DNA of 64,000 bases from IMGVR_UViG_3300035180_001778:286470-350469, one strand, 5' to 3'. Shown: positions 866 to 62,693, numbered from the stretch's first letter. The notes: a model not told the origin generated them from the letters alone. Numbers and translations: made by a program.

Positions 866-894
866 CTACAGATGTCGCCCGGTCCCGATCAACC
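866..894 (-). promoter_or_regulatory. GGTTGATC-N16-TGTA promoter motif
   Basis: Motif with ATG 858 exactly 8 nt after TGTA; one of 38 copies. Confidence 0.85.
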
Positions 895-900
895 TGATTC

Positions 901-1401
901 TCAGATGTTGACCTTGTAGATGGCCAGAGCTTCAGCCAGCGGGAGAAGATTGAGGATCTTCAGCGCCTTGAGGGTCTGCGCGAGGGTGGGGTAGGCGAGC
1001 ATATCTTTCAGCTCCTCGGCCTTGTAGGTCTTGGTCTGGAAGATGCCCGCCTTGCCTTCCTTGGTGAAGAGGATGCGCTTGCTCGGGGCCTTCTTGAAGT
1101 CCCGCTCCACGATGCTCTCCGTCACGAGGGAGCCCACGAAAGTCTCACCCGTCGGCTGGAAGGTGAAGAAGCCCCCGGGTTCTGACCCGTCCTTGATGTT
1201 GGAGACGAGCTTGGGGAGGGTCGCCGCGTGGGCATTGAGCTGCTCACGGCACTCCCGGGGCTCGATGTGCGTGGCCCCGCCGTGCCCGTCGTTGTGGGCC
1301 GTGCCGAGCTTCTTGCCGTCGAGGTAGATGGCCCCCTCGAAGCAAGTGGTCTCTTTCGAGGCGAACGCGGAAACCTTCAGATTGCGGATCTCGAACTTCA
1401 T
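901..1401 (-). CDS. hypothetical phage protein
   Basis: 166-aa ORF with phage-like codon usage; GGTTGATC 29 nt upstream of the ATG. Confidence 0.8.
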   Translation of the reverse strand: MKFEIRNLKVSAFASKETTCFEGAIYLDGKKLGTAHNDGHGGATHIEPRECREQLNAHAATLPKLVSNIKDGSEPGGFFTFQPTGETFVGSLVTESIVERDFKKAPSKRILFTKEGKAGIFQTKTYKAEELKDMLAYPTLAQTLKALKILNLLPLAEALAIYKVNI

Positions 1402-1431
1402 GGGGGGTCCTTGGTTTTCGTGATTTCCAGA

Positions 1432-1545
1432 TCAACCGAGAACGTCGTCAGACTTCTCGGACGTCGGAATCGCCTTGAGAGCAATGTCCGCCCCAAAGAG
1501 GGCCGACACCAAAAGGACGGTCAGAACAATGGGAAGGGTGAACAT
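1432..1545 (-). CDS. 37-aa hydrophobic peptide (not in ORF track)
   Basis: MFTLPIVLTVLLVSALFGADIALKAIPTSEKSDDVLG. Promoter at exact N8 spacing; the stop is the TGA of the next GGTTGATC. Confidence 0.7.
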   Translation of the reverse strand: MFTLPIVLTVLLVSALFGADIALKAIPTSEKSDDVLG

Positions 1546-1552
1546 GGCGGTC

Positions 1553-1630
1553 CTACAAATTGGAGACCCGAGCGATCAACCGAACACAACCAACAAAATC
1601 TGGTTGATCCAGGGGACCCCCAAAATGTAG
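1553..1630. promoter_or_regulatory. divergent promoter pair
   Basis: Minus copy 1553-1581 and plus copy 1602-1630, both with 16-nt spacers. Confidence 0.85.
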
Positions 1631-1639
1631 ATGACCCCC

Positions 1640-2524
1640 ATGATGAAGACCAGCACGATTGACCCCCGCGTCGAAGAGGCTCAGAAGGTTCTCCAGGACG
1701 GAATCGCCGCGCTAGTCGCTGGTGCCGACTGGAAGAAGTACCTGGAATTTCAAGCGAAATTCCACAACTACTCGCTCTGCAACACCTTCTGGCTGATGGC
1801 TCAGGCCATGCGCCGAGGGATCGAGATCAGCCAGTTCGCCGGGTTCAACACTTGGCGTGACGCGAAGCGCCAGGTCCGCAAGGGCGAGAAGGCGTTCCAG
1901 GTGCTCGCCCCCCTTCGCTACAAGCGCGAGGTCGTGAAGGACGGCACCAAGGAAAACGTATTCGGAATCCGTGGGTTCCGCGTCGCATCAACCTTCGACA
2001 TCTCGCAGACGGACGGCCCGGCCCTCCCCGAGATCGTGTCGCAGCTCCAGGGAACGAGCGAGGAGATCGAGGCGGTCTACGCCTCTCTCGTCAAGTTCTC
2101 CACGGAGATCAACAAGGTGCCCGTCCGTCGGGAAGTGCTCCCGGCCGGCACCAACGGGTACTACAGCCGCGAGGGCTTCATCGTGGTGTCGAGCACCATC
2201 AGTGGGCTCCAGGCGCTCAAGACGCTGGCTCACGAGATCGCCCACTCGATCCTGCACGAGAAGCTGGCCGACTGCCATGACCAGGTGTACCGCGAAGTCG
2301 AGGCCGAATCCACGGCCTTCGTGGTGCTCCACTCCCTCGGGTTCAGCGCGGAGTCCTACTCCTTCGGGTACGTGGCCGGCTGGTCCAAGGGTGACGCCAA
2401 GATCGTCAAGGAGGTCGCCGAGCGTGTCCAGCGGGCTGCGAAGACCATCCTCGGCTCCCTCGTGAAGCCGAAGACCTGGCAAGAGCACCTCGACGACGAC
2501 ATCCTCGAAGACAAGGCGGCGTGA
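1640..2524 (+). CDS. ArdC-like antirestriction protein (ssDNA-binding N-terminus + zincin metallopeptidase)
   Basis: FHNYS..N..L…AGF.TW….R.V.KGEK…FDISQT, HEIAH, EVEAES..FVV, Y..GW motifs. Confidence 0.85.
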   Translation: MMKTSTIDPRVEEAQKVLQDGIAALVAGADWKKYLEFQAKFHNYSLCNTFWLMAQAMRRGIEISQFAGFNTWRDAKRQVRKGEKAFQVLAPLRYKREVVKDGTKENVFGIRGFRVASTFDISQTDGPALPEIVSQLQGTSEEIEAVYASLVKFSTEINKVPVRREVLPAGTNGYYSREGFIVVSSTISGLQALKTLAHEIAHSILHEKLADCHDQVYREVEAESTAFVVLHSLGFSAESYSFGYVAGWSKGDAKIVKEVAERVQRAAKTILGSLVKPKTWQEHLDDDILEDKAA

Positions 2525-2558
2525 AAGAAGGGAGTCTGAGAAATCAGGCTCCCTTCTT
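2525..2558. terminator. intrinsic terminator-like hairpin
   Basis: AAGAAGGGAGTCTGA-GAAA-TCAGGCTCCCTTCTT directly after the stop. Confidence 0.8.
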
Positions 2559-2565
2559 CATTTCC

Positions 2566-2594
2566 GGTTGATCGACAGCTACCCCAGTCTGTAG
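2566..2594 (+). promoter_or_regulatory. promoter for tRNA-like RNA
   Basis: GGTTGATC-N16-TGTAG; RNA 5' G is 8 nt after TGTA. Confidence 0.85.
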
Positions 2595-2601
2595 TCTCCT
2601 T

Positions 2602-2753
2602 GCTGAGACGGCGGAGGTAGCTGGAACGCCCTGGAGCCTGCGACTTTCCTCGGAAGACTTTGGAGTTGCCCGCGTCGGTGACGAGATTGTCTGACCTCGG
2701 AGGGGGACAGAGGACAGGCCAGCTACGAGGGTTCGATTCCCTCTCTCAGTGCC
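2602..2753 (+). ncRNA. tRNA-like RNA with anticodon loop replaced by an ~80-nt structured insert
   Basis: Acceptor GCTGAGA/TCTCAGT; D-arm GCG/CGC with GG; T-arm GAGGG-TTCGATT-CCCTC; stem CTGG/CCAG; 3' G-CC then T-tract. Confidence 0.75.
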
Positions 2754-2837
2754 TTTTTCGGGATGCCTCGATCACCAACCCCTCGGTGAAGCCATCCTTC
2801 TGATTCTGATTCCCACCCATGCCACTCGGAGATCGAT

Positions 2838-3050
2838 ATGGACCAGCCTTGTACGATTATCATCCCCTGGGAGCCCGACGTCTGCATCCGCACCGTCTGG
2901 CATCCCAAGGCACCCACGGGCACCTTCAGCACCCTCAGCCGAGGGCACTTCGACACCAAGGCGGAAGCCCAGACTTGGGCGGATAGGCACCTCGGCCCCA
3001 AGGCGACCTACACGATCGTGAACATCGCCGACCTGCCCGGAACTCGCTGA
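2838..3050 (+). CDS. hypothetical protein
   Basis: 70-aa ORF with phage-like codon usage. Confidence 0.6.
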   Translation: MDQPCTIIIPWEPDVCIRTVWHPKAPTGTFSTLSRGHFDTKAEAQTWADRHLGPKATYTIVNIADLPGTR

Positions 3051-3057
3051 GGATGCC

Positions 3058-3303
3058 GTGAGCAAAGCGAACGGCGGTACGAAGAAGAGACGGTGGGCGA
3101 ACATGAAGCACGCCCACGAGATGCGTTGGGCATGTCCAGGGTGTGGGGGGAGCGTACACACTCCCCGCCAGCCCGTGTATGGCCCCTACTCCAGGAAGCT
3201 TGTGGAAGCTGAAATCCCATACCTTCCCTGGGGAAGCCCCTGCGCTGCTTGTATTCGAGCGTGGGGTGGACGACACCGCCGCCGCCGCCGCCCCACGCGC
3301 TGA
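3058..3303 (+). CDS. hypothetical protein (CxxC)
   Basis: 81-aa ORF filling the gap before the convergent dcd. Confidence 0.4.
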   Translation: MSKANGGTKKRRWANMKHAHEMRWACPGCGGSVHTPRQPVYGPYSRKLVEAEIPYLPWGSPCAACIRAWGGRHRRRRRPTR

Positions 3304-3927: not shown

Positions 3928-3948
3928 CCGGGGCCACTACACCAGAAA

Positions 3949-4434: not shown

Positions 4435-4454
4435 GACCCCCTAATACACCGGAA

Positions 4455-4775: not shown

Positions 4776-4782
4776 GCCCGAG

Positions 4783-4850
4783 GTACAAGACCCCAAGGGT
4801 CAGGATCAACCTGATTTTTCTTGTTGATCCTGACCCTTCATTCTCTGTAG
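4783..4850. promoter_or_regulatory. divergent promoter pair embedded in a 16-bp inverted repeat
   Basis: AAGGGTCAGGATCAAC (4795-4810) / GTTGATCCTGACCCTT (4823-4838); ATGs 4775 and 4858 both at N8. Confidence 0.85.
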
Positions 4851-4857
4851 GACCCCC

Positions 4858-5430: not shown

Positions 5431-5431
5431 G

Positions 5432-6132: not shown

Positions 6133-6133
6133 C

Positions 6134-18406: not shown

Positions 18407-18444
18407 GCTAGTAGAGTACACCAAAGCCCTTGGTGTAGAGGCGG

Positions 18445-21701: not shown

Positions 21702-21732
21702 CCCAGGCTATACAGGCCGACCCCGAAGGCGA

Positions 21733-23379
21733 TCAACCTTCTGCGGGCTTCTTGGGCTTCTTGGGCTTCTTCTTCCCCAGCTTCTTGGCTTCCTTCTCTT
21801 TTTCCTTCCGATCCCATTCGCGGGACTCCGCCCGGTCCACCTTGTCCCGCTCCCGACGCTCCTTGACGGGCCCCATCGTCAGCTTGTAGAGCTTCCCCAA
21901 GAACTTCCGGTGCGCCTCCCACTCCCCACACTGAGGCCCCTTGTAGGAGCTGGGATGCCAGATGTACCGCACCTCGGACAGGACACTCTGGATGAGTGCC
22001 AGCTCACCCATGGAGTTGAGGTAGTCGGTCACCTCTTCCTCCGTGAGCGTCTGCTTGAGCATGAGCTGCCAGTGCGTGTTCAGCCCCGCGCAGGAAATCG
22101 AGGGGTTCTTGCTGATCATGTAGGAGATCGGGTTGAACTTGCACTCCAGAGCATCCTCCATGAAGATGCGGCTCGTCAGCCAGTACGCCGCACTCTCGCG
22201 CATGCCCTCCAGCTTCGACTTGTCGGCTTCATCGCCCTTGGCCTCCAGCTCAGCGATCTCCGCCTGACGCCGGGCATTCGATTCGTCCGCTTCCGCTTGA
22301 GCCTTCTTGCAGAAGTCCCACGCCTCCCGAGCGGCATTGTGGTAGGCCTCGACGTCGGACATGACCCTCTTGTACCCCGGCCCGTAGGTCTCGACCTTCG
22401 TGCCGGTGAGAGCTTGCCAGACATCCTCCCGGATCATGGCCTGGAGGATCGGAAACGTCTTGGGGCGCTTGGACTCCGACATCAGGGAGAAGTCGTGCCC
22501 CTGTTGCGTCTTCGTTCCCATCTTCGGACGGATGTTGAGTTCCCCGTCCACCATGGCACGATCCGTCCCACACGCGAGCATCACCGCGTATCGACGACGG
22601 AGCTTCTTCGCGAGGACCTGGAGCATCTTCTTCGTCTCCTCGCCTCGCATGTACCCGCCGCAGCGGACCCGGATCTCACCGTGGCGGATCTGGTCGACGA
22701 TGAAGCCGTACTGCACGTTGCCGAGCTTCAGCGGGACAACTCCCGTGTCGCTCTCCATGGCAGCATCCGCAGCTTCATCTTCAGCGAAGTCCGCAGCTTC
22801 TTCCTCTTCGGTCCGATCCTTGGTATGCAGACCGTTGCCCTGACGCTTCCGATTCCGAGCCTCGCGAAGATCCTCGTGTTTTTTCAGGAGGGTCGCATCG
22901 GCCATCGTGATCGTCAGCCCCGCCGTACGGATGATGTTCTCCACACGTCGCAGCGTCGGGATGCCCTTGGGAATCACGCTCTTGGGCATGAAGCTGAACT
23001 TGGGGCGCTTCCGTTCGAGGTCTCGGACCTCGATGTGGCACTCTTGCGTTGCATCGAGCAGCTCGTCGAAGGCCATTCCCTTCCTGGCGGGGACATCGTG
23101 AACGGTGTTGTCCCCGAGGCCCTTCTCGACCAGGTCAAGCTTGAACGCATCGAGCCACAGCCGTTGGATCGAGGGGTCTTTACAGTCCTCGATCGAGCCG
23201 TAGTCGTTGTACTCCGCACGGATAGGCGGAGTACGGATGTACCACTCCTCCGCCCCATTGGCGTAGTCCCCTCTCTCGCTGAAGGGGCTCGCTTGGAGCA
23301 GGATATAGCGGACGGGGTCTCCGGCACCGATCGGCAACCCCGAGACGCAGCATGTGTAGTCGAATGATCCCATGACCAT
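21733..23379 (-). CDS. large hypothetical protein
   Basis: 548-aa ORF starting MGSFDYTCCVSGLPI; KKPKKP basic tail. Confidence 0.85.
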   Translation of the reverse strand: MVMGSFDYTCCVSGLPIGAGDPVRYILLQASPFSERGDYANGAEEWYIRTPPIRAEYNDYGSIEDCKDPSIQRLWLDAFKLDLVEKGLGDNTVHDVPARKGMAFDELLDATQECHIEVRDLERKRPKFSFMPKSVIPKGIPTLRRVENIIRTAGLTITMADATLLKKHEDLREARNRKRQGNGLHTKDRTEEEEAADFAEDEAADAAMESDTGVVPLKLGNVQYGFIVDQIRHGEIRVRCGGYMRGEETKKMLQVLAKKLRRRYAVMLACGTDRAMVDGELNIRPKMGTKTQQGHDFSLMSESKRPKTFPILQAMIREDVWQALTGTKVETYGPGYKRVMSDVEAYHNAAREAWDFCKKAQAEADESNARRQAEIAELEAKGDEADKSKLEGMRESAAYWLTSRIFMEDALECKFNPISYMISKNPSISCAGLNTHWQLMLKQTLTEEEVTDYLNSMGELALIQSVLSEVRYIWHPSSYKGPQCGEWEAHRKFLGKLYKLTMGPVKERRERDKVDRAESREWDRKEKEKEAKKLGKKKPKKPKKPAEG

Positions 23380-23385
23380 CTAGTA

Positions 23386-23418
23386 CACCAGTGACCCCCA
23401 AATTGGGGGTCACTGGTG
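23386..23418. repeat. 33-bp near-perfect palindrome
   Basis: CACCAGTGACCCCCAA-A-TTGGGGGTCACTGGTG. Confidence 0.9.
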
Positions 23419-23667: not shown

Positions 23668-23727
23668 TTAGATATGGTCCTGGGAGAGGGTCGGGGTATC
23701 CATGCCCCTCCTACAACTCCAAGTATA

Positions 23728-23949
23728 TCAGGACCAACCGTTCTCGGGAGGCAACCTCGCTTTTCTCCGAGCTTCCGCGCGTTCGTGTATGCGGGCTTCT
23801 CGTTCGTCGTTGATCTCGTTCAAGCACTTCCAGAGGAAGTGCTTGAACGAGATCCCGGCGAGCCACTCCAGGCCCGCGTAGCCGTAGTGATAGACGGCTA
23901 CGACCAAGCCCACGGTGAAAACGAACAGGAGAATCAGGGGACGGTTCAT
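23728..23949 (-). CDS. small membrane protein
   Basis: N-terminal TM helix; GGTGTA upstream. Confidence 0.7.
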   Translation of the reverse strand: MNRPLILLFVFTVGLVVAVYHYGYAGLEWLAGISFKHFLWKCLNEINDEREARIHERAEARRKARLPPENGWS

Positions 23950-23958: not shown

Positions 23959-24162
23959 TTACACCGGGAGGTTCTCTTCCGTGTAGCGGAATTCCTCGCG
24001 CACCCTCATGGAAGAGGTGAACGCCGGCAAGACGGCCATCACCCACATCATCTGGTGCATCCCGGCTTTCCCTTTGGCGCAGGACTTCTTGAAGATACAG
24101 GCAGACGCGCCCTTGCCGCGTTGCTCGATGATACAGCCACAGGGGAACGTGTACTTTTTCAT
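23959..24162 (-). CDS. Cys-rich small protein
   Basis: YTFPCGC…C…C. Confidence 0.65.
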   Translation of the reverse strand: MKKYTFPCGCIIEQRGKGASACIFKKSCAKGKAGMHQMMWVMAVLPAFTSSMRVREEFRYTEENLPV

Positions 24163-26549: not shown

Positions 26550-26583
26550 GCCCCATTTACAGATTGGGGCATGTCGCGATCAA

Positions 26584-27117
26584 CTAGAAACGAACCTGCG
26601 CGAGGGCCGCAGCGACCCCATCGACGAGCGTCTGATTGCGCGTGAGCTTCCCCTGGGTGAGGGTGCTGTGGGGGTCCGCGCCATCACCACCGAGGTTCTT
26701 CGCGATGATCGAGCCGACCGTGGTCGTCTTGAATCCGAGCCCGAAGGCATCCGAGAACGCGTCCCCGGGGAAGGTGATCCCGGTCGACGTCGCGAAGCAG
26801 GTCTTGTTGCCGTGGTAGACGATCGCGATCACCGCGAGATCCAGGATGACGTCCCCACCGTAGGGCCCGACGACGCCGGACTCGATGCCGATGTAGAGGT
26901 CCCCATCCTCGGGCCCGTCGAGCTGCGCCTGGGTGGCACGGTGCAAGGCACCCTTCATGGTCTCCTCGAACCCGTAGGGCTGCTCGTTGACCGCCGAAGC
27001 GACCTTCACCCCGACGACCTCGACACCCTTGAAGCCGACCCGCCCGCAGGCCTCCTGAACAGCTTGAATCTTGATCTTGCTCGTCGTACCCAAAACGATC
27101 TTCATGCTCATCTCCAT
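26584..27117 (-). CDS. YjjX-like non-canonical purine NTPase (ITPase/XTPase)
   Basis: LGTTS.IKIQAV…SAVNEQP.G.EET..GA.HRA…IGIESG. Confidence 0.85.
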   Translation of the reverse strand: MEMSMKIVLGTTSKIKIQAVQEACGRVGFKGVEVVGVKVASAVNEQPYGFEETMKGALHRATQAQLDGPEDGDLYIGIESGVVGPYGGDVILDLAVIAIVYHGNKTCFATSTGITFPGDAFSDAFGLGFKTTTVGSIIAKNLGGDGADPHSTLTQGKLTRNQTLVDGVAAALAQVRF

Positions 27118-27614: not shown

Positions 27615-27644
27615 GGGGGTTCTACAGGATCGCGGGGTTCGCGA

Positions 27645-27956
27645 TCAACTGAAGAGCTTCACGAGCTTCCGGAAGACGTTGAGGGTCACCTCTTCCGGCT
27701 CGCCACCCGAGAACTCCACGGCGAGATCGAACGCATCGTTCGCCTTGGGGTGCTCCGAGACGCCGAACTCCGCGAAGAGGTCGCGCTTGAACTCCGCGTT
27801 GAGCTGTTCCTCGCGAGCTTTCCAGGCCGTCTGCTTCCTGGCGTTGTTCACGACCTCGCCCCTGATGTAGGTCGGCTCCGGGTTCTTGTAGTACCCAGCT
27901 TCGAGCTTGTCGTAGATCGTCATCGGACTCACCCCGTCCCAAAGTTGGATCGTCAT
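27645..27956 (-). CDS. hypothetical protein
   Basis: 103 aa; stop lies within the next GTTGATC. Confidence 0.75.
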   Translation of the reverse strand: MTIQLWDGVSPMTIYDKLEAGYYKNPEPTYIRGEVVNNARKQTAWKAREEQLNAEFKRDLFAEFGVSEHPKANDAFDLAVEFSGGEPEEVTLNVFRKLVKLFS

Positions 27957-28237: not shown

Positions 28238-28345
28238 GGCGATTCTCCTACAAGACGAGGTCCTTCTGGATCAATCTCGTAGGAGAATTTGTAGTTCACC
28301 CCACGGAGTAAGCCGCCCCCATTTCTGGTAAGGCACCCCCGGAGA

Positions 28346-28558: not shown

Positions 28559-28626
28559 CTACAGTCTGAGCCACTTGGAAATCAACCCCAACCTCCTGGT
28601 TGATCCCCAAGGCCTCGCTCCTGTAG
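28559..28626. promoter_or_regulatory. divergent promoter pair
   Basis: GGTTGATT-N16-TGTAG (minus) and GGTTGATC-N16-TGTAG (plus), both N8 to ATG. Confidence 0.85.
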
Positions 28627-30435: not shown

Positions 30436-30521
30436 GGTCCCTCTCCTACAGTCCAAGCCACACCAAGATCAACCGGGAAGGTTGATCCCAAAGCCTCCCC
30501 TTCTGTAGGAGAGGGACCATG
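30433..30521. promoter_or_regulatory. symmetric divergent promoter cassette
   Basis: Identical TGTAGGAGAGGGACCATG on both strands; GATCAACC/GGTTGATC 5 nt apart. Confidence 0.9.
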
Positions 30522-31186: not shown

Positions 31187-31204
31187 GGGCTCGGGCTACA
31201 CCGG

Positions 31205-31698: not shown

Positions 31699-31908
31699 TT
31701 ACACCAAGATGAGGTCGGCGTAGTGCTCCTCGGCTGCATCGGTCGCCAGCTCGGGCGTCGCGTACGAGCCGACATGGTGGCGTTGCCCCGGCGGCCGGTA
31801 GGAGACCGTGTGCCACTCGAAGCGGTGCGAGATCACGTAGTGCCCGCTGCACGAGAGCGGGGCGCAGTCCTTCGAGCCTTCGATCTCTTCCCAGACGAGC
31901 TTGCTCAC
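31699..31908 (-). CDS. hypothetical protein
   Basis: 69 aa; GTGA overlap. Confidence 0.7.
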   Translation of the reverse strand: MSKLVWEEIEGSKDCAPLSCSGHYVISHRFEWHTVSYRPPGQRHHVGSYATPELATDAAEEHYADLILV

Positions 31909-32810: not shown

Positions 32811-33012
32811 GCCTCTCCTACAGCTCGACCCCTCTTGGGATCAACCCATAATTCCGTGCCAAGCTGTCCGGAGTTTTCAGACATGTTGGCAAGAATCCGA
32901 TCCATATACGTGCGCGGCCGGTTTCGAACGCCGTGCCAGCCAGGGCTTGGGATCCCGGGGTGAGCCCATCCCTTGCTGGTCTCTGAGCTGCCTCTCGGTG
33001 TACTCTCTCCCC

Positions 33013-34909: not shown

Positions 34910-36163
34910 TTACACCAACCACGTCGGCCGTGGAATGTTTTTGGGGTCGGGAGGGGGGCTTCCCGGGTCTTTGGGGGTAGCCACTTCCTTCACGGAAAGC
35001 AGCCGCATCCGGTTCACGCTTTCGAGGACGCGGGCCGGCTGGATGTGACGGAGCCGTCTCACGATGTAGGCGAGGTAGGTATGGGTCAGTTGGTCCGTTG
35101 CCTCGACCAAACGATCCAAGACATCGTTCTCGATCTTCATATCGTACCAGGCGAGCAGACCGAGGAAGATTTCCCGACGTTCTTCCGCATCCGGAGGCGG
35201 GAAGAAGACGGGCTCATCAAGCCTGTCCGGCTTCAGCATCGCAGAGTCGATCTTGCTCGCGTCGTTGGCTGTCACGATGAGCGTCGTCTTCGGGTGAGCC
35301 CGCTTGACGTACTCCGCCATGAACAGAATTCGAGCGTTGGTGTCTTCGACCGGAGCGCGATCGAAGTCATCGATGATGAGGAAGTTGGGGCGCAGTGTGT
35401 CGAGGAGGAAGCCCAGCTCATCGATCGCCAGTCTCGGCAGAACGGCAGCATCGATGTTGAGGCATTTCCCGCCGAACTCAGCCGCCAGTCGCGACGTGGC
35501 GAGCGTTTTCCCCGTGCCCTTCGGCCCCAAGAATAGGTACGAGATGCTCTCTCCGGCTTCCACCAAAGGGCGGTGTCCGTCAATCAGCTCCTTGAGCATC
35601 ACGACAGACTTCGGCGAAACGTATCCGGGGATCCTTGCCGGGATGGGGGTGAAGGTCATCTCTTCGCGCCACCCCTGCTTCACCATCGAGAGGTAGATAC
35701 CCTCTGTGTATTCGCCCCACAGCGAGTCGACGGCCTTTGCGAAGTCGAACCCTTGGGAGTGATACAGATCGCCTGTCACCCGAGGGCCATCCCCCCAGTT
35801 CTCTTCCTGGAACAGGACGACTTCCCCATCCGAGCTGGCGATCTCCATGAGGTCCAAGTGCTCATCGATGTGGGTACGCTCCAAGGGGTACGCGCGTCCG
35901 AGACTCGTCCCGAAGAAGAGCTTGACGAAGACTTGGCCTTGTCGTCGCTGGAGCTGCCTCTCCGTGGTGATCTCCCGTAGGCGGTTTGAGCGAGCGTTCC
36001 CGGTCCCGTAGTGCTTGTGGACCGAGTCGAAGATCGCGAGCGCCTTGACGAGGATCTCGAAGACTGAGTCCTCTTTCCGAGGGACCTTCGTCAGAATCTC
36101 CGACGCGAATCGAAACGTGGAGAGCGCTTTTTGCCAGGAAGGGAGGAGAGTCTTGATCCGCAT
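34910..36163 (-). CDS. AAA+ ATPase
   Basis: GPKGTGKT, IIDDFD, TAND…ID.AMLKPDRLD…PPPD.EER. Confidence 0.88.
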   Translation of the reverse strand: MRIKTLLPSWQKALSTFRFASEILTKVPRKEDSVFEILVKALAIFDSVHKHYGTGNARSNRLREITTERQLQRRQGQVFVKLFFGTSLGRAYPLERTHIDEHLDLMEIASSDGEVVLFQEENWGDGPRVTGDLYHSQGFDFAKAVDSLWGEYTEGIYLSMVKQGWREEMTFTPIPARIPGYVSPKSVVMLKELIDGHRPLVEAGESISYLFLGPKGTGKTLATSRLAAEFGGKCLNIDAAVLPRLAIDELGFLLDTLRPNFLIIDDFDRAPVEDTNARILFMAEYVKRAHPKTTLIVTANDASKIDSAMLKPDRLDEPVFFPPPDAEERREIFLGLLAWYDMKIENDVLDRLVEATDQLTHTYLAYIVRRLRHIQPARVLESVNRMRLLSVKEVATPKDPGSPPPDPKNIPRPTWLV

Positions 36164-36200
36164 GCGCCCAACCTACACCAGATCGGTGTAGGCTCTGGGG

Positions 36201-41659: not shown

Positions 41660-41908
41660 TCAGCCCTCGATGAGGACCATGGCCCGCGCGATCACGCGAT
41701 CCATGTGGGGCTCGAACTTCCAGCCCTTGGGGGCTCCGAACAGCTCGGGAGCGTCGCACGACGAAGAGTAGGTTGCTCCCCCGTCGTCGCGATTCTTGAG
41801 CGCAGCCAGGAACGTTGCCGCTCCCTCCACGTCGTCGAGAGCGAACGTCCCCATCGAATCCTCTCCGAACTCGATGACCAGCCGACCAGCTTCGATTGCG
41901 ATATACAT
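41660..41908 (-). CDS. hypothetical protein
   Basis: Promoter 41919-41947. Confidence 0.75.
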   Translation of the reverse strand: MYIAIEAGRLVIEFGEDSMGTFALDDVEGAATFLAALKNRDDGGATYSSSCDAPELFGAPKGWKFEPHMDRVIARAMVLIEG

Positions 41909-41949
41909 GGTCCCCTCCCTACAGATCGAGCGCTTCTCGGATCAACCGA

Positions 41950-42707: not shown

Positions 42708-43291
42708 GATCCTCCTACAAACGTAGGGTCATACCGATCAACCGACGCTTGGGTGATGGCTCGCGCCAGTTCAATTACTCTAGCCTGATCGAATGTGCCC
42801 TTGAGCCTGTTGACATCTTTGTGTAGCCACTGAACGTTGCCTACCTCGTATCCCTTGGCATTGTCCACACGATCCAGGGACGCAGTAGATTCTCCGTGCT
42901 TCTCACCGTGAACGCTTGCGGCGAAGCCGATATCAAGCCCAGACATCGCACAGCGCTTGTTCTGCGCTGACAGCAGTCCCAGGAGGTACTCTTTGGTGAC
43001 CCCCAGATCGAAGTAGATTCCGCGCTTGCTAGCGGATATTTGCAAGCGCCTCAGATAGTGGTGGGAGAGCTGGCCGTTGAGTTGCTTCGCCCGATTGGCG
43101 CACTCACGACACGACATCAGCGCCTTCTTGCCTTTCAGCCGAAATCCGATGACGTTGTACACTTTACCGCAGGCGCAAAGCACGTCCCATGTGGGGTGCT
43201 TTTGAACGTACCCAGCGTGTGTGTAGAGCTTGTCAGGACCTCTCGTCAAAACGAGAAGTTGGCCTGAAATGTAGCCTTCCTGTACTTCCAC
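42704..43291 (-). mobile_element. free-standing HNH homing-endonuclease-like gene
   Basis: W..LCACG…SC..C; RCAMSG…ASLDRVDN.KGY..GNVQW…VN..K; visibly more AT-rich codons. Confidence 0.8.
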
Positions 43292-47038: not shown

Positions 47039-47119
47039 GGGGGTCCTACAGGAAATCCGAGTTCGGGATCAACCGAAAGAAACGTCTACCCCAAGAGCCG
47101 CATGGTGTAAATTGGACCC

Positions 47120-51302: not shown

Positions 51303-51355
51303 GGCTTTTCTACAAGGTTGGAGGGCCGCGGATCAACTGGTGTATGGGCAAGAGG

Positions 51356-55764: not shown

Positions 55765-55859
55765 GCGTCTCTTGTACACCATGCCCATGGTTTTGGCTGT
55801 GTCTGAAAATCGACGTCCTGAATTTCCTTCTTCGGGTGTAGGGAGGAAGGGTAATTTTA

Positions 55860-57247: not shown

Positions 57248-57265
57248 GTGGTGTAAAGGTATCCC

Positions 57266-58919: not shown

Positions 58920-58921
58920 CA

Positions 58922-59946: not shown

Positions 59947-59970
59947 AGAATTTGTGGTAGACCTCTTGAC

Positions 59971-60144
59971 ATGACTACCAAGATCAAGACCGACGTGTGC
60001 CTCAACTGCGGAGCCCCCGCATACACCACCAAAGGGGGCACCACGGTTCCCTTGTGCTCCTCGTGTGCCGGGAAGACGAGCCCGGCGAGAGGCGTCAAGA
60101 TGGTGGGCACCCCCAAGACGAAGCTGCCCCCGAATCCGGTGTAG
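59971..60144 (+). CDS. 57-aa Zn-finger protein (not in ORF track)
   Basis: CLNCG…CSSC. Confidence 0.65.
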   Translation: MTTKIKTDVCLNCGAPAYTTKGGTTVPLCSSCAGKTSPARGVKMVGTPKTKLPPNPV

Positions 60145-60153
60145 AGGGGAGGG

Positions 60154-60831
60154 ATGCCTCGCTTCTACTGCGTCCAGTATCGTGCGTCCCGAGCTGGGTG
60201 GGTCGATCTCCCGTCCCTCGCTTCTGTGCATGAGCATGAGGCGATTCAAAGCAGCCACACCTTCTCAGAGATGAATGGTGTGTGTACGCGAGTGATTCGC
60301 AAGCCCCACGGTTGGGTGCCTGTCGTGACGACCCCTGCGATTGAAAGCCCCGTTCGAACGGGGCTTTCAATCGCAGGGGCTCTACGTCATCTGCGGCAAG
60401 AAGGCCTCACCTGTCAGTCGAGAGATCCTAACTTGACGGGTGTCTCTCTCCACATCATGGGAGGGCCACGTACCTCTATCGCAGGAGGCATCTTGTTGTA
60501 CCATGATGCCTTCAGCATTTTCCAGTCCGAGGAGGGAGAGGACTTTGAGGTGGGCTTCGTTGGGGCGCAGGGACGACCTGACCGCGATGTCCACGTTGCT
60601 ACTTTGGTTCAAGCGGTCGGCACCGTTCTCGAAGAATACGCTAACCGCCGTCCTCCTTGGGTTGACGGTGTCGAGCTTCAAGCTGCGAATACCCCGTCTC
60701 TCACAGACGCTCAGCTCCGGCGACGTGACGAAAAACTGCGTCGTCGAGCTGAAGCGGAGTACAATCGACGTCCCACATTTTGGGATCAGCTCGATTCCCC
60801 CGAGTTCGGTGTAAACCCAAAAGGTGACTGA
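60154..60831 (+). CDS. hypothetical protein with W-tail
   Basis: GGTGTA-N10-ATG; ends RPTFWDQLDSPEFGVNPKGD. Confidence 0.7.
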   Translation: MPRFYCVQYRASRAGWVDLPSLASVHEHEAIQSSHTFSEMNGVCTRVIRKPHGWVPVVTTPAIESPVRTGLSIAGALRHLRQEGLTCQSRDPNLTGVSLHIMGGPRTSIAGGILLYHDAFSIFQSEEGEDFEVGFVGAQGRPDRDVHVATLVQAVGTVLEEYANRRPPWVDGVELQAANTPSLTDAQLRRRDEKLRRRAEAEYNRRPTFWDQLDSPEFGVNPKGD

Positions 60832-61228
60832 ACTGAACGTTCTCTATGTTCCGCCTCGGAAGCCGGCCCTCCAGATCATCGGGGAGTCGTGCGACAAGGC
60901 CGAAGCTCAAGGGATCCAGCTCGACCGCGGAGCGATGTTCGATTGGACGGGTCCGGACAAGAATGTCCCCGTTCGATGTACCGCTCTGGGCGCTGTCCTG
61001 TGGGCTTTCGATCTGGCCACGAGCGCACAGGCCTGGACGCATCTGAAGACCATCCTCAAGGTCGATGACGCCTGGCTCTACCGTTTTTCTATCGGCTGGG
61101 ACAACCGGGTGGGGTTGCTCATCGTGGATCACGAGTTCAAGGTCTTGGGCAAGGATACCGTGAGTCACGCTGCGCTCAGCATGACCAAGGCCCGCGTGCG
61201 CAAGACCCCCCAGGAGATCGGATTGTAA
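60824..61228 (+). CDS. hypothetical protein
   Basis: GGTGTA-N10-GTG; 134 aa. Confidence 0.7.
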   Translation: MTELNVLYVPPRKPALQIIGESCDKAEAQGIQLDRGAMFDWTGPDKNVPVRCTALGAVLWAFDLATSAQAWTHLKTILKVDDAWLYRFSIGWDNRVGLLIVDHEFKVLGKDTVSHAALSMTKARVRKTPQEIGL

Positions 61229-61790
61229 TGACTCTTTCGAAAGAAGCATTGGCGGACATCATGCAGCACTACCCCGCCCCGCTCGTCGGGCTCGCCATTG
61301 GGGATGCTCTCGGAGCGCCGTTCGAGAAGCCCTCCAGCAAGTCCCACATCGTCGACCAGGACCTTCTCACCTGGAAGGGGAGTACCGCGACTCTCGTGGG
61401 GGCTACCACGACCAGGAAGCCGGGGAGTGGACGGACGACACTCAGATGTCGCTCGCGCTCGCAGGGGCTTTGGTGAAGCGACGGGGGTTCGACCCTCGCA
61501 CGGTGGCCCATTCCTACCTCGATTGGTTCCAATACACGAACTGTCGGGGCATTGGCGGGACGACGAAGAAGGCATTGGAGACCTTCGCCCGGGATTTTGA
61601 CCCTGAGACGTGTGGGGTCATCGGCTCCGAGGGAAATGGGACGGCAATGCGTGCCACCCCGATCGGGATGTACTACTGCCATCGGCCCCTCGACGAGGGA
61701 ATGGCTGTGGCTCGTAGGGATGCGGTGCTCACCCATCGCTCCCTGGAGGCCGAGGAAGGCTCGGCGGCGTCGCGCAGAACGAGACGAGCC
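61228..61790 (+). pseudogene. ADP-ribosylglycohydrolase (ARH/DraG), frameshifted and 3' truncated
   Basis: GLAIGDALGAPFE; GEWTDDTQMS; GIGGTT; GNGTAMR; THRS..A. Frameshift at G4 near 61378; no C-terminal DxD motif. Confidence 0.8.
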
Positions 61791-62044
61791 TCATCGTGCG
61801 TCCGGCCATCGGCTGGGCTGTTCGCGACGAAGAAGCCGCGAAGTAGCTCATGGGCTACATCCTCCGTCGTGACGTGGCACCGGGATCCGACATCAGTTGG
61901 ATCCGGAAATATTGGTGGGCGGGGGATACCGAAGGCTGGGTTGACGTGCGCTATCGGGCCTTCTCCTACAGCACTCGGGAGAAGGTCCGAACCGCTCAAG
62001 AAGCCCTGAAAATGCTGGCGAAGGTCGAAGAGACCGAGGGGAGA

Positions 62045-62335
62045 TCAAGGTCTTCCGTCGCAAATGAGGGCTAGTACTCCGATGGGAGAGGTCGTGACCG
62101 AACGGTCCGCCTCCGTGATGATCCAGAGGGATCGCTCCTCTCCGAGCTTGTAGACGCTCAGGAGGCGGGAACCCTCTTTGAGGGCCCGATCGTTCTCGCG
62201 ACGGTCATGGGCATACACGTCGCCCCAGTCCCCGGTCTCGTGGCGCTTGAGGCACGCGAGCATCTCTTCCTTGGTGAACTTCTCCTGGCACCCAGGGGTG
62301 CAAAGCAGACGGCCGAGTTCGAACTTGGACTTCAT
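62045..62335 (-). CDS. conserved small plasmid/phage protein
   Basis: F.LG….TPG…L.RH..GDWG.V…D…N..AL..G.RLLS.Y…WIITEADRSVTT; promoter at N8. Confidence 0.75.
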   Translation of the reverse strand: MKSKFELGRLLCTPGCQEKFTKEEMLACLKRHETGDWGDVYAHDRRENDRALKEGSRLLSVYKLGEERSLWIITEADRSVTTSPIGVLALICDGRP

Positions 62336-62342
62336 GCTCTGA

Positions 62343-62428
62343 CTACAAAAAGGTGGAGAGCCGGATCAACCTGTCATGTCTCGCCGCTTGTGGCTGGGGG
62401 GTTGATCCGGCTCTCCCTCGGCATGTAG
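62343..62428. promoter_or_regulatory. divergent promoter pair
   Basis: 62343-62371 (minus) and 62400-62428 (plus), 16-nt spacers. Confidence 0.85.
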
Positions 62429-62459
62429 AACCCGCGGACAGATCCGCAAGAGGCGACGC

Positions 62460-62660
62460 ATGGCTAAAGGAATTCTGGATCAGAACTACATCGTGGAAAT
62501 CCGCGGTGGGCGGCCGACCCTCATGGGACCCTACCGTGACTGGGCGGATCGTCGTCGAGCTTACCTGGAGATGCTGGAAGATGGCCGCCAGGTCATCTAC
62601 ATCGACGCCACGGGTCCGCTTTCTGTGGGAACCCACAACCCTGAAGAGGAACACGGTTGA
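62460..62660 (+). CDS. hypothetical protein
   Basis: 66 aa; stop within GGTTGATC. Confidence 0.75.
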   Translation: MAKGILDQNYIVEIRGGRPTLMGPYRDWADRRRAYLEMLEDGRQVIYIDATGPLSVGTHNPEEEHG

Positions 62661-62693
62661 TCCGTGGCTTCCTCACCCTGTAGAGCCGGCAAC

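What the first reader, a model, noticed from the sequence alone, without database searches (positions are those of the whole stretch)
866..62683. Phage-specific bipartite promoter GGTTGATC-N16-TGTA (38 copies), apparently driving leaderless mRNAs
Seen. Plus-strand copies start at about 1602, 2566, 4822, 5723, 10988, 11914, 12221, 14111, 14641, 15652, 28598, 30480, 62400, 62655. Minus-strand copies span from about 866, 1553, 4783, 10959, 27622, 28248, 28559, 30446, 32452, 32818, 34575, 39200, 40040, 41175, 41919, 42464, 42715, 43811, 44413, 47046, 50546, 51310, 53585, 62343. The spacer is 16 nt in 37 copies and 15 in one. In 20 copies the ATG, and in one the ncRNA 5' end, lies exactly 8 nt after TGTA. 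Inference: -35/-10 elements for a phage-encoded or alternative sigma factor, with transcription starting at or next to the start codon. The spacing also corrects several starts (4775, 14147, 44405, 53576).
Basis: partly seen in the sequence, partly recalled or inferred. Interest (0 to 1): 0.75.

Follow-up and report, generated by a model that had tools for sequence, protein, structure and literature searches.

The report
Huge-phage promoter for leaderless genes
A 28-base two-box signal, repeated 41 times in this stretch of a huge uncultivated phage and sitting exactly 8 bases before the start codon of most genes it precedes, is almost certainly a phage-specific promoter. It probably makes messenger RNAs with no leader and is probably read by sigma-like proteins that the phage itself encodes.

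Summary
GGTTGATC-N16-TGTA occurs 28 times exactly in the window, against 0.02 expected. There are 41 copies when one mismatch or a 15-nt spacer is allowed.

The window is the end of a 350-kb phage record that holds 91 copies. They are almost all intergenic and point at the downstream gene. Fifty have ATG exactly 8 nt after TGTA. Some copies precede tRNA genes, and several form back-to-back divergent pairs with no room for another promoter.

The boxes are conserved while the spacer drifts in an 89%-identical relative. The same motif with the same 8-nt spacing, but with no GGAG, occurs in a distant huge phage. This rules out the ribosome-binding-site reading.

I found no RNA polymerase gene. The phage carries a conserved pair of divergent sigma-like genes. 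One is ECF-like, and the pair is itself preceded by the motif.

Most likely the motif is a promoter for a phage sigma factor bound to host core polymerase, giving leaderless mRNAs. No transcript-start data exist, and neither the sigma assignment nor the host is proven.

A second class, GGTGTA-N10-ATG with about 50 copies, was also found.

The parts
867..894 (-). class I promoter copy, exact; ATG at 858 (8 nt after TGTA), ORF 201 aa
1554..1581 (-). class I copy, exact; ATG 1545 (8 nt), ORF 37 aa; divergent partner of 1602
1602..1629 (+). class I copy, exact; ATG 1640 (10 nt), ORF 294 aa (ArdC-N / M78 domains)
2566..2593 (+). class I copy, exact; no ATG within 12 nt (leadered gene or RNA)
4784..4811 (-). 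class I copy, exact; ATG 4775 (8 nt), ORF 106 aa; divergent partner of 4822
4822..4849 (+). class I copy, 1 mismatch (TGTTGATC); ATG 4858 (8 nt), ORF 190 aa
5723..5750 (+). class I copy, exact; ATG 5762 (11 nt), ORF 50 aa
10960..10987 (-). class I copy, exact; GTG 9 nt after TGTA; abuts its divergent partner 10988
10988..11015 (+). class I copy, 1 mismatch (AGTTGATC); ATG 11024 (8 nt), ORF 71 aa
11914..11941 (+). class I copy, exact; ATG 11953 (11 nt), ORF 98 aa
12221..12248 (+). class I copy, exact; ATG 12258 (9 nt), ORF 442 aa
14111..14138 (+). class I copy, exact; ATG 14147 (8 nt), ORF 98 aa
14641..14668 (+). class I copy, 1 mismatch; leadered: A at the predicted start, GAGGA then ATG 29 nt after TGTA, ORF 311 aa
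15652..15679 (+). class I copy, exact, in front of a tRNA gene
15692..15764 (+). tRNA with anticodon TCA (73 nt, ordinary cloverleaf; opal-suppressor type), 12 nt after TGTA
27623..27650 (-). class I copy, 1 mismatch; ATG 27614 (8 nt), ORF 165 aa (HD_4 domain)
28249..28276 (-). class I copy, 1 mismatch (GATTGATC); ATG 28237 (11 nt), ORF 94 aa
28560..28587 (-). class I copy, 1 mismatch (GGTTGATT); ATG 28551 (8 nt), 20 codons; divergent partner of 28598
28598..28625 (+). class I copy, exact; ATG 28634 (8 nt), ORF 68 aa
30447..30474 (-). class I copy, exact; ATG 30435 (11 nt), ORF 81 aa; divergent partner of 30480
30480..30507 (+). class I copy, exact; ATG 30519 (11 nt), ORF 84 aa
32453..32480 (-). 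class I copy, exact; ATG 32441 (11 nt), ORF 80 aa
32819..32846 (-). class I copy, exact; ATG 32810 (8 nt), ORF 61 aa
34576..34603 (-). class I copy, exact; ATG 34564 (11 nt), ORF 118 aa
39201..39228 (-). class I copy, exact; ATG 39192 (8 nt), 26 codons
40041..40068 (-). class I copy, 1 mismatch (TGTTGATC); ATG 40032 (8 nt), ORF 61 aa
41176..41203 (-). class I copy, exact; ATG 41167 (8 nt), ORF 84 aa
41920..41947 (-). class I copy, exact; ATG 41908 (11 nt), ORF 82 aa
42465..42492 (-). class I copy, exact; ATG 42456 (8 nt), ORF 168 aa (GmrSD_N domain)
42716..42743 (-). class I copy, exact; ATG 42707 (8 nt), ORF 84 aa
43812..43839 (-). class I copy, 1 mismatch; ATG 43803 (8 nt), ORF 91 aa
44414..44441 (-). 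class I copy, 1 mismatch; ATG 44405 (8 nt), ORF 108 aa
47047..47074 (-). class I copy, exact; ATG 47038 (8 nt), ORF 154 aa
50547..50573 (-). class I copy with a 15-nt spacer, boxes exact; ATG 19 nt after TGTA
51311..51338 (-). class I copy, 1 mismatch; ATG 51302 (8 nt), ORF 239 aa
53586..53613 (-). class I copy, exact; ATG 53576 (9 nt), ORF 105 aa
62344..62371 (-). class I copy, exact; ATG 62335 (8 nt), ORF 96 aa; divergent partner of 62400
62400..62427 (+). class I copy, exact; leadered: ATG 32 nt after TGTA, ORF 66 aa
62655..62682 (+). class I copy, exact; ATG 62694 (11 nt), ORF 378 aa (cytidylyltransferase-like)

Best explanation
(G/A)GTTGATC-N16-TGTAG(G/A)A is a phage-specific bipartite promoter, here called class I. 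It belongs to a huge uncultivated phage with a record of at least 350 kb.

**Proposed mechanism.**
- GGTTGATC acts as the -35 element.
- TGTA(G) acts as a short -10 element of the 'nGTn' type that ECF sigma factors use.
- Host core RNA polymerase is directed to these sites by a phage-encoded sigma-like factor.
- The candidates are two adjacent genes just upstream of the window, at G000 279337-281071 on the minus strand. One is a 302-aa divergent sigma70-family protein. The other is a 285-aa ECF-like protein.
- Transcription starts about 8 nt after TGTA, usually at an A preceded by C. In more than half of the copies that A is the A of the ATG, so the mRNA has no leader and no Shine-Dalgarno sequence. 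In other copies the leader is 1-3 nt, or longer and then carries its own Shine-Dalgarno sequence.
- The regulon covers small genes of early or anti-defence type, the tRNA clusters and the sigma operon itself (positive feedback).

**Shown and inferred.**
- Shown: the motif, its geometry, its placement, its conservation and the presence of the sigma-like genes.
- Inferred: promoter function (about 0.9), a leaderless or near-leaderless start (about 0.8), and reading by a phage sigma rather than a host one (about 0.6).
For: **Statistics.** There are 28 exact copies in the window against 0.02 expected. The genome has 67 exact copies and 91 with up to one mismatch. The reversed-pattern control gave 0.

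**Geometry.** The spacer is 16 nt in 91 of 95 copies. ATG lies 8 nt after TGTA in 50 copies, 9 nt in 8 and 11 nt in 13. The logo extends to TGTAG(G/A)A and to C-A at the predicted -1/+1. In copies where the ATG is not at 8 nt, that position is still A in 20 of 43 (p = 8e-5).

**Placement.**
- Copies are nearly all intergenic and co-oriented with the next ORF.
- Copies precede tRNA genes.
- There are six back-to-back divergent pairs in the window. Their boxes lie 0-28 nt apart, so no other promoter fits and the start must fall between TGTA and the ATG.

**Not a ribosome-binding site.**
- Only 9 of 50 copies with the 8-nt spacing have GGAG after TGTA, and 37 of 50 have no GGAG or GAGG at all.
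- In a distant phage (L138, sigma 35% identical), 7 of 8 copies read TGTAGTACCnCC-ATG with the same 8 nt.
- Where the gene is leadered (L137, L138, L144; window 14641 and 62400), the Shine-Dalgarno sequence lies after the predicted start.

**Conservation.** In 29 orthologous sites of an 89%-identical relative, the boxes are 93-100% conserved and the spacer 66-90%. That relative has 39 copies, 24 of them with the 8-nt spacing.

**Transcription apparatus.**
- I found no RNA polymerase with PF00562, PF00623 or PF00940.
- The 302-aa ORF matches TIGR02937 at E 6e-4. Of 61 aligned relatives, 26 hit Sigma70_r2, with a best E-value of 1.8e-7. Its profile's best PDB hits are sigma factors.
- The adjacent 285-aa ORF has a profile that hits sigmaR region 2 (E 5.8e-4) and M. 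tuberculosis SigH (E 0.005). The top structural matches of its model are ECF sigmas.

**Link between sigma and motif.**
- The motif lies directly upstream of the sigma gene in G000 and in L137, L138, L139/140, L144 and L147. A variant lies there in L146.
- Seven of eight relatives also carry a distal canonical TTGACn-N17/18-TA promoter upstream of the same gene. The background rate is 0.007 per 160 nt, giving P about 1e-14.
- This is the classic layout of a host-read promoter plus an autoregulated promoter.

**Not a host-type signal.**
- Canonical sigma70-like sites are depleted in the phage: 41 against about 137 in shuffles.
- A strict form of the motif gave only 3 unrelated single hits in 185,579 bacterial and archaeal genomes.
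Against: - **No transcript-start data.** No RNA run holds this phage. The one related run gave only scraps. One 131-nt piece reaches 17 nt upstream of a predicted start, but it may be DNA or read-through.
- **The sigma assignment is by association only.** The protein-DNA complex prediction was not folded. Both sigma-like proteins are weak matches: the 302-aa ORF alone scores E 0.035 for region 2, and Foldseek E-values are 0.5 or worse.
- **The -35 box lacks the AAC core typical of ECF promoters.**
- **Timing problem.** If class I drives the very first genes, such as the ArdC-like gene, a phage sigma would not yet be present. G000 itself has no canonical promoter upstream of its sigma gene.
- **Exceptions among relatives.** Two relatives with a sigma homologue (L141, L145) show no class I motif in the 15-21 kb sampled.
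- **One awkward copy.** The copy at G000 249659-249686 lies only 4 nt before an ARAGORN-called tRNA.
- **Two spacings are unexplained.** It is not clear why TGTA sits 8 nt from the ATG here but 10 nt in the second promoter class.
Confidence: 0.6

Rival explanations
1. The motif is a promoter, but a host sigma factor reads it. This could be the host's primary sigma with an unusual consensus, or a host alternative or ECF sigma that the phage exploits. The phage sigma-like proteins would then serve the other promoter class or later genes.
For: - The -35 box contains TTGA, and counted as TTGATC-N18-TA it has the same layout as the distal TTGACn-N18-TA promoters of relatives.
- Class I drives genes of early type: ArdC-like, GmrSD_N and HD domain genes, small ORFs and tRNAs. 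It also drives the sigma operon itself. This is what one expects of promoters used before any phage protein exists.
- G000 has no other recognisable promoter for its sigma gene apart from a GGTGTA element.
- The host is unknown, so its promoters cannot be compared.
Against: - There is no T at the -7 equivalent. The TA of TGTA is also 2 nt too close to the ATG for sigmaA geometry. By contrast, the GGTGTA-N10-ATG class fits that geometry exactly.
- Relatives carry a separate canonical promoter next to the class I box upstream of the sigma gene. That would be redundant if the host sigma read both.
- Near-perfect boxes in 91 copies are typical of factor-specific phage promoters.
- No bacterial or archaeal genome among 185,579 has more than one strict match.
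- The motif is kept across phages whose sigma proteins are only 32-36% identical.
Confidence: 0.22
2. The motif is the promoter of an unrecognised phage-encoded RNA polymerase. Such an enzyme could be too divergent for Pfam models, or could lie in the missing quarter or so of the genome.
For: - The record is estimated to be 73% complete.
- Huge phages often carry very divergent polymerases. The P23-45 virion and non-virion RNA polymerases are examples (PMC10770324, listed).
- The high information content of the motif resembles single-polymerase promoters.
Against: - A two-box layout with a rigid 16-nt spacer is the signature of a sigma factor with two DNA-binding domains. It is not the signature of single-subunit or non-canonical polymerases.
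- Searches with PF00562, PF00623 and PF00940 found not even a weak candidate.
- Two sigma-like genes are present and linked to the motif.
Confidence: 0.08
3. The motif is not a promoter. It would instead be a translational or regulatory site, with TGTAGGAG as a ribosome-binding site and GGTTGATC as an operator or RNA element. Alternatively it is a selfish short repeat.
For: - GGAG follows TGTA in 15 of 91 copies. In the 11-nt class it sits at a good Shine-Dalgarno distance, in 6 of 13 copies.
- Many upstream reading frames end at the TGA inside the box: 43 of 90, against 32 in a control frame.
Against: - Most copies have no Shine-Dalgarno-like sequence, and a relative keeps the spacing with TGTAGTACC.
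- Copies precede tRNA genes.
- Divergent pairs leave no room for any other promoter.
- Orientation always follows the downstream gene.
- The spacer sequence is free to vary, so the unit is not a mobile repeat.
Confidence: 0.05

Closest known systems
ECF (group 4) sigma factor regulons with autoregulated promoters, for example E. coli sigmaE, B. subtilis sigmaW (TGAAAC-N16-CGTA), S. coelicolor sigmaR and M. tuberculosis SigH
   Same: - Two short, highly conserved boxes with a rigid spacer of about 16 nt.
- A -10 element built around GT: TGTA here and CGTA in relatives.
- The target promoter lies directly upstream of the sigma gene.
- The 285-aa protein matches sigmaR and SigH region 2.

The consensus sequences quoted for the known sigmas are from my own knowledge.
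   Different: - The -35 box is GGTTGATC, without the AAC core.
- The factor is encoded by a phage, and as a conserved pair of two different sigma-like genes.
- The 302-aa member has an insertion of about 100 aa inside region 2.
- The regulon holds about 90 promoters, most of them fused to the start codon.
Phage-encoded sigma factors with phage-specific promoters (SPO1 gp28 and gp33/34, T4 gp55/gp33, phiEco32 gp36)
   Same: Host core polymerase is redirected by a phage sigma to promoters unlike host ones. A cascade uses several promoter classes. These systems are cited from my own knowledge.
   Different: - There is no detectable sequence relation to those factors. tblastn of the 302-aa protein against 50,697 phage records found nothing.
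- The consensus sequence is different.
- The transcripts here are leaderless.
Thermus phage phiYS40 middle and late transcripts, and P23-45 extended -10 promoters
   Same: - Here the phage would likewise make most of a gene class as leaderless mRNA, from promoters abutting the start codon. phiYS40 is described this way in PMC3594737.
- P23-45 middle and late promoters are of the extended -10 class without a -35 element (PMC3950348). They resemble the second class found here, GGTGTA-N10-ATG.
   Different: - Those promoters are read by host sigmaA and lack a -35 box.
- Class I here has a strong, unusual -35 box and a non-canonical -10 element that sits 2 nt closer to the ATG.
Deinococcus-Thermus '-10 motif adjacent to ORFs' (TANNNT 6-7 bp upstream of the start codon, leaderless mRNAs)
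   Same: A -10 element lies at a fixed short distance from the start codon, and that spacing can be used to correct gene starts (PMC12340547). Class II here has the same geometry, with TA at -12/-11 and ATG at +1.
   Different: - That is a host-wide sigmaA feature with a TANNNT consensus.
- Class I has no T at -7, is 2 nt closer to the ATG, and needs a -35 box.

Membership tests
Sigma70-family bipartite (-35/-10) promoter | Two conserved boxes separated by a nearly fixed spacer | tested here: met
   The boxes are GGTTGATC and TGTA. The spacer is 16 nt in 91 of 95 copies.
Sigma70-family bipartite (-35/-10) promoter | Lies upstream of the transcription unit and points along it, including non-coding genes | tested here: met
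   Copies are intergenic and co-oriented with the next gene. They also precede tRNAs and form divergent pairs.
Sigma70-family bipartite (-35/-10) promoter | Primary transcripts start 5-9 nt downstream of the -10 element | not testable with these tools
   No RNA run holds the phage, and one search gave only scraps. Indirect support comes from the C-A preference at the predicted -1/+1.
Canonical primary-sigma promoter (TTGACA-N17-TATAAT) | -10 hexamer with A at -11 and T at -7, placed 6-7 nt before the start | tested here: not met
   T is not enriched at the -7 equivalent: 10 of 91 copies have T there. The TA of TGTA lies 8 nt from the ATG rather than 10 nt.
ECF sigma promoter and regulon | -10 element centred on GT (CGT, TGT) with a rigid spacer of 16-17 nt | tested here: met
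   The -10 is TGTA in G000, L137, L138 and L147, and CGTA in L139 and L144. The spacer is N16.
ECF sigma promoter and regulon | -35 element with an AAC core (GGAAC or TGAAC) | tested here: not met
   The -35 box is (G/A)GTTGATC and has no AAC.
ECF sigma promoter and regulon | The target promoter lies directly upstream of the sigma gene (autoregulation) | tested here: met
   The motif lies 8 nt before the ATG of the 302-aa sigma-like gene in G000. It also lies upstream of the homologue in 5-6 other lineages. This is sequence evidence only.
ECF sigma promoter and regulon | The sigma consists of sigma2 and sigma4 domains only | tested here: inconclusive
   - The 285-aa ORF has a sigma2 match to sigmaR and SigH at E 5.8e-4 and 0.005. 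It also has an N-terminal extension of about 90 aa.
- The 302-aa ORF has region 2 split by an insertion of about 100 aa.
- Foldseek matches are not significant.
Leaderless mRNA genes | The promoter -10 element lies at a fixed short distance from the start codon | tested here: met
   50 of 91 copies have ATG exactly 8 nt after TGTA. The same spacing holds in G003 (24 of 39) and in L138 (7 of 8).
Leaderless mRNA genes | No Shine-Dalgarno sequence, and AUG as the start codon | tested here: met
   37 of 50 copies have no GGAG or GAGG in the 8 nt. All 50 starts at that position are ATG, and the only GTG starts seen are at 9 nt.
Leaderless mRNA genes | The 5' end of the mRNA coincides with the start codon | not testable with these tools
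   There are no transcript data.
Shine-Dalgarno ribosome-binding site | A purine-rich GGAGG-like core at a variable distance of 5-10 nt from the start codon | tested here: not met
   GGAG is present in only 9 of 50 copies, and then just 4 nt from the ATG. The relative L138 has GTACC instead.

The most novel reading that the evidence does not exclude
A clade of uncultivated huge phages may run a largely self-contained gene-expression programme. It would be built on a conserved operon of two divergent sigma-like proteins and at least two promoter classes, GGTTGATC-N16-TGTA-N8-ATG and GGTGTA-N10-ATG. Both are fused to start codons, so about a third of the phage genes would be made as leaderless mRNAs.

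Combined with the phage's own 40 tRNAs, tmRNA and suppressor tRNA, this would be a coordinated takeover of both transcription and translation initiation. The two sigma-like proteins might act as a pair, as sigma plus co-sigma or as two specificities. The single residue in the region 2.4-like helix that tracks the first -10 base might be a readable specificity code.
Probability: 0.35. Interest if true: 0.78.

Novelty: new variant of a known kind. Interest (0 to 1): 0.62.

Why it matters
Almost nothing is known about how uncultivated huge phages control their genes. This finding gives three things.

- **A defined regulon.** It has about 90 promoters with base-level geometry.
- **Candidate factors.** These are a conserved pair of sigma-like genes with about 190 relatives clustered at 50% identity in metagenomes.
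- **A rule for gene starts.** ATG lies 8 nt after TGTA in class I and 10 nt after GGTGTA in class II. This fixes the true start codon of well over 100 genes in this and related genomes.

If the leaderless reading is right, the phage makes a large share of its proteins by a translation route that bypasses the Shine-Dalgarno mechanism. That could be a takeover strategy, as proposed for Thermus phage phiYS40.

The promoter and sigma pair could also serve as a compact orthogonal expression part. All of this can be tested in vitro with synthesised genes and promoter fragments, even though the host is unknown.

Tried and rejected
- **RNA evidence.** Two run searches found only DNA runs from sediment and microbial-mat metagenomes, plus one RNA run flagged by a related protein. 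Laying that run gave four scraps and no read-start information.
- **Sigma-DNA complex.** The prediction for the 302-aa protein with a promoter was accepted but not folded. It is no evidence either way.
- **Host identification failed.**
  - The three genome hits of the strict pattern (Planctomycetales, Bryobacterales and Opitutae MAGs) share no protein with the phage and are chance hits.
  - The atlas search with the phage's LigA gave mostly viral clusters.
  - tblastn with an AAA ATPase hit phages of many different hosts.
- **Cultured relatives.** Megablast of 20 kb and tblastn of the sigma-like protein against 50,697 phage records found nothing.
- **Pfam region 2 search of the genome.** It found nothing. 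The sigma-like genes surfaced only with TIGR02937 and family profiles.
- **Other region 4 hits.** The ORFs in L010 and L011 look from their sequences like HNH or homing-endonuclease proteins, not sigma factors.
- **Distant sigma relatives.** The search for related loci with alignments failed because no stretch was conserved enough. I used the look-up of encoding contigs instead.
- **Motif search in L141, L145 and L146.** De novo k-mer search found no repeated promoter in them.
- **TGA read-through idea.** I asked whether the short ORFs after some copies are TGA read-through genes served by the suppressor tRNA. Their stop codons are mixed TAA and TGA, so I dropped this.
- **The TGA inside the box as a stop codon.** The idea that it systematically ends the upstream gene has only weak support, 43 against 32 in a control frame.
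- **Literature.** A search for the motif string returned only unrelated primer sequences.

Full report
**What the window is.** The window is the last 64 kb (286470-350469) of a 350,469-bp IMG/VR virus record, G000. CheckV estimates the record as 73% complete. It has about 60% G+C. Near-identical DNA is held by sediment and microbial-mat metagenomes. The genome carries 40 tRNA genes and a tmRNA between 242 and 266 kb. It is therefore a huge phage of a bacterium, and I could not name the host.

**Check of the observation.**
- GGTTGATC-N16-TGTA occurs 28 times exactly in the window. Shuffles gave a mean of 0.02 and a maximum of 1.
- With one mismatch in the 12 fixed bases there are 40 copies with a 16-nt spacer. 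One exact copy has a 15-nt spacer.
- Three more were missed: 21711-21738(-), 23712-23739(-) and 26558-26585(-).
- Genome-wide there are 67 exact copies and 91 with up to one mismatch. The pattern read backwards gives none.
- The spacer is 16 nt in 91 of 95 copies.
- The logo extends the motif to (G/A)GTTGATC(C/G)...TC...C-TGTAG(G/A)A....C-A.
Genome-wide the figure is 50 of 91. Smaller groups sit at 9 nt (8 copies) and 11 nt (13 copies).
- One detail does not hold. The tRNA after copy 15652 begins 12 nt after TGTA, not 8.

**Evidence that the motif is a promoter.**
- *Placement.* Copies are nearly all intergenic and always point at the next gene.
- *Non-coding targets.* Copies precede tRNA genes in the window and in the tRNA region. 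A purely translational role is therefore excluded.
- *Divergent pairs.* Six pairs in the window are back to back on opposite strands: 1581/1602, 4811/4822, 10987/10988, 28587/28598, 30474/30480 and 62371/62400. The whole gap between the two divergent start codons consists of two copies. The promoters of both genes must be these copies, and the starts must lie between TGTA and the ATG.
- *Conservation.* In a relative that is 89% identical over 227 kb (G003), the two boxes are 93-100% conserved at 29 orthologous sites. The spacer is only 66-90% conserved. G003 has 39 copies, 24 with the 8-nt spacing.
- *Distribution.* Copies cluster at 0-60 kb and 240-350 kb, among small genes. Few lie in the 60-240 kb block of large genes.
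- *Genes driven.* In the window these include an ArdC-N/M78 protein, a GmrSD_N protein, an HD-domain protein and a cytidylyltransferase-like protein. This looks like an early or anti-defence set.

It does not hold.
- Only 9 of 50 copies with the 8-nt spacing have GGAG after TGTA. In 37 of 50 there is no GGAG or GAGG in the 8 nt.
- A distant huge phage (L138, NCBI assembly GCA_902730345.1) has a sigma homologue only 35% identical. It carries 8 copies in 20 kb, and 7 read TGTAGTACCnCC-ATG, with the same 8 nt and no purine run.
- Where the downstream gene is leadered, the Shine-Dalgarno sequence lies after the predicted start. This holds for the sigma genes of L137, L138 and L144 and for window copies 14641 and 62400.
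- Position +9 after TGTA is A in 20 of 43 copies in which it is not part of an ATG (p = 8e-5). The base before it is mostly C. This is the usual pyrimidine-purine start-site preference.
- All 50 start codons at the 8-nt position are ATG.

Together with the divergent pairs, these points make a start at or within a few bases of the start codon the only reading that fits. No transcript data exist to show it directly.

**Who reads the motif?**
- *No polymerase found.* Pfam models for the two large subunits of multisubunit polymerases and for T7-type polymerases found nothing, not even weak candidates.
- *Not a canonical promoter.* T is not enriched at the -7 equivalent. The TA of TGTA is 2 nt too close to the ATG. 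Canonical sigma70-like sites are about three-fold depleted in the phage (mononucleotide shuffles).
- *The 302-aa ORF.* It lies at G000 280163-281071(-), six kb upstream of the window, and matches TIGR02937 weakly. An exhaustive search found 190 related clusters. Of 61 aligned relatives, 26 hit Sigma70_r2 with a best E-value of 1.8e-7. The family profile's best matches among solved structures are sigma factors. The aligned stretches are regions 2.1-2.2 and a 2.3/2.4-like helix, separated by an insertion of about 100 aa.
- *The 285-aa ORF.* It lies directly downstream of the 302-aa ORF. This neighbour is kept in six of the other lineages examined. Its profile matches region 2 of S. coelicolor sigmaR (E 5.8e-4) and M. 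tuberculosis SigH (E 0.005) over the whole domain. The best structural matches of its model are ECF sigmas, though with weak scores.
- *A third protein.* A 236-aa ORF at 212 kb has a region 4 domain and a second helix-turn-helix.

**The link between the sigma operon and the motif.**
- In G000 the 302-aa gene is preceded by AGTTGATC-N16-TGTA-N8-ATG.
- The motif is also directly upstream of the homologue in these lineages:
  - L137, 59% identical, from soil
  - L138, 35% identical
  - L147, with a 15-nt spacer
  - L139/L140 and L144, with CGTA as the -10
  - L146, where a variant AGTTGAAT-N15-CATA still lies 8 nt from the ATG
- In 7 of the 8 relatives with 160 nt of upstream sequence there is also a canonical TTGACn-N17/18-TA promoter further upstream. 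Such sites occur only once or twice in each 11-21 kb locus. The background is 0.007 per 160 nt, giving P about 1e-14.

A host-type promoter followed by a factor-specific promoter in front of a sigma gene is the classic layout of an autoregulated alternative sigma. It also argues that the hosts use ordinary sigmaA promoters, so the class I motif is something else. A strict form of the motif gave only three unrelated single hits in 185,579 bacterial and archaeal genomes.

**Weak points.**
- The assignment of class I to a phage sigma rests on association alone.
- The -35 box lacks the AAC core of ECF promoters.
- G000 has no canonical promoter upstream of its own sigma gene, only a GGTGTA element.
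- L141 and L145 have the sigma homologue but no class I motif in the DNA sampled.
- If class I genes are the very first to be expressed, a host factor would have to read them.

I therefore put promoter function at about 0.9, a leaderless or near-leaderless start at about 0.8, and a phage sigma rather than a host sigma at about 0.6.

**A second promoter class.** After masking class I, intergenic k-mers pointed to (T/C)(T/C)GGTGTA.
- GGTGTA-N10-ATG occurs 51 times, against 1.8 in shuffles with a maximum of 6. In 50 of the 51 the ATG opens an ORF of at least 40 codons.
- G003 has 44 copies.
- The class has no -35 box and is spread over the whole genome.
- It drives an NAD-dependent DNA ligase, AAA/clamp-loader-like ATPases and a DHH phosphoesterase.
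- With TA at -12/-11 the ATG is exactly +1. This is the geometry reported for sigmaA-dependent leaderless genes in Deinococcus-Thermus (PMC12340547). It also resembles the extended -10 promoters of Thermus phages (PMC3950348; PMC3594737).
- Why TGTA sits 8 nt from the ATG in class I and 10 nt in class II is unexplained. It suggests two different factors or two different registers of recognition.

**Comparison with known systems and novelty.**
- The behaviour is that of an alternative-sigma regulon of ECF type, carried by a phage. It is combined with mass production of leaderless mRNAs, as described for phiYS40.
- It is not a member of the canonical sigma70 promoter class, because the -10 test failed. 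It is not a ribosome-binding site. It meets only some ECF promoter criteria: the GT-centred -10, the rigid spacer and the position upstream of the sigma gene are met, and the AAC core of the -35 is not.
- The sigma-like pair has no relative among 50,697 deposited phage genomes.
- The huge-phage survey that deposited a related genome mentions phage sigma70 genes only in passing and does not discuss phage promoter motifs (PMC7162821).

I rate it a new variant of a known kind.

Noticed in passing
Whole genome. In the window the GGTGTA boxes are at 3938-3943(-), 4445-4450(-), 18417-18422(-), 23384-23389(-), 23960-23965(-), 31197-31202(-), 31700-31705(-), 34911-34916(-), 36174-36179(-), 55775-55780(-), 32997-33002(+), 47104-47109(+), 57250-57255(+) and 60138-60143(+): There is a second promoter-like class, (T/C)(T/C)GGTGTA-N10-ATG, with no -35 box.
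- It has 51 copies, against 1.8 in shuffles.
- It is spread over the whole genome.
- It drives DNA ligase, AAA/clamp-loader-like and DHH genes.
- Its geometry fits a sigmaA-type leaderless promoter, with TA at -12/-11 and ATG at +1.
   Followed up: partly
G000 279337-281071(-), 5.4-7.1 kb before the window start; L131:669-2403: An operon holds two divergent sigma-like genes, of 302 aa and 285 aa. It is preceded by a class I box, and a GGTGTA element lies 10 nt upstream of that box. The gene pair and its neighbours are syntenic in distant huge phages.
   Followed up: yes
L138, L139, L141, L143, L144, L145, L146: 90-157 nt upstream of the sigma homologue: A canonical TTGACn-N17/18-TA promoter lies upstream of the sigma gene in 7 of 8 relatives. 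It is nearly the only such site in each locus. G000 itself lacks one.
   Followed up: yes
window 15692-15764(+): The tRNA that ARAGORN calls 'SeC' is an ordinary 73-nt tRNA with anticodon TCA, so it is an opal-suppressor type. TGA is nevertheless the commonest stop codon of the phage, at 298 of 441 rough gene calls. I found no sign of TGA read-through genes.
   Followed up: partly
G000 242624-265701(-): A cluster holds 40 tRNA genes and a tmRNA (tag ANDNALVPMQMAA). Class I copies are interspersed at 244262, 244951, 245384, 246216, 249686, 254083 and 265046. The copy at 249659-249686 ends only 4 nt before the called tRNA-Leu, which does not fit a start 8 nt after TGTA.
   Followed up: no
G000 212424-213134(-); L009:1144-1854: A 236-aa protein has a sigma70 region 4 domain at residues 71-119 (E 2.5e-13). 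It has a second helix-turn-helix, an acidic N-terminus and no region 2. It could be a regulator, an anti-sigma or a co-factor of one promoter class.
   Followed up: partly
whole genome G000: Canonical sigma70-like sites (TTGACA-N16-18-TATAAT with up to 3 mismatches) are about three-fold rarer than in mononucleotide shuffles, 41 against about 137. The tetranucleotide CTAG is strongly under-represented, at 0.39 of expectation.
   Followed up: no
alignment A2, helix NHFxN[W/Y/A/F] of the 302-aa family: The residue after the second N tracks the first base of the -10 box upstream of the gene. It is W or Y with TGTA in 4 lineages and A with CGTA in 2 lineages. The lineages are few and related, so this is a lead only.
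   Followed up: partly
G000 81552-81620 and 122263-122379; L011, L010: Two ORFs with weak region 4-like matches look from their sequences like HNH or homing-endonuclease proteins. Relatives carry GIY-YIG and HNH genes near the sigma operon.
   Followed up: no
window 39192, 23703 and 1545 (minus strand): Three class I copies open very short ORFs of 26, 11 and 37 codons. After a single stop, the same reading frame continues open for 85 to more than 160 codons. The stop codons are TAA, TAA and TGA. These may be leaderless mini-ORFs ahead of the real gene, or chance.
   Followed up: partly
window 41798-41928: One 163-nt contig from a run labelled RNA matches with 3 mismatches in 131 nt. It reaches 17 nt upstream of the predicted start of the gene at 41908. 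It may be DNA carry-over, read-through or a relative, so it is not usable as evidence.
   Followed up: no
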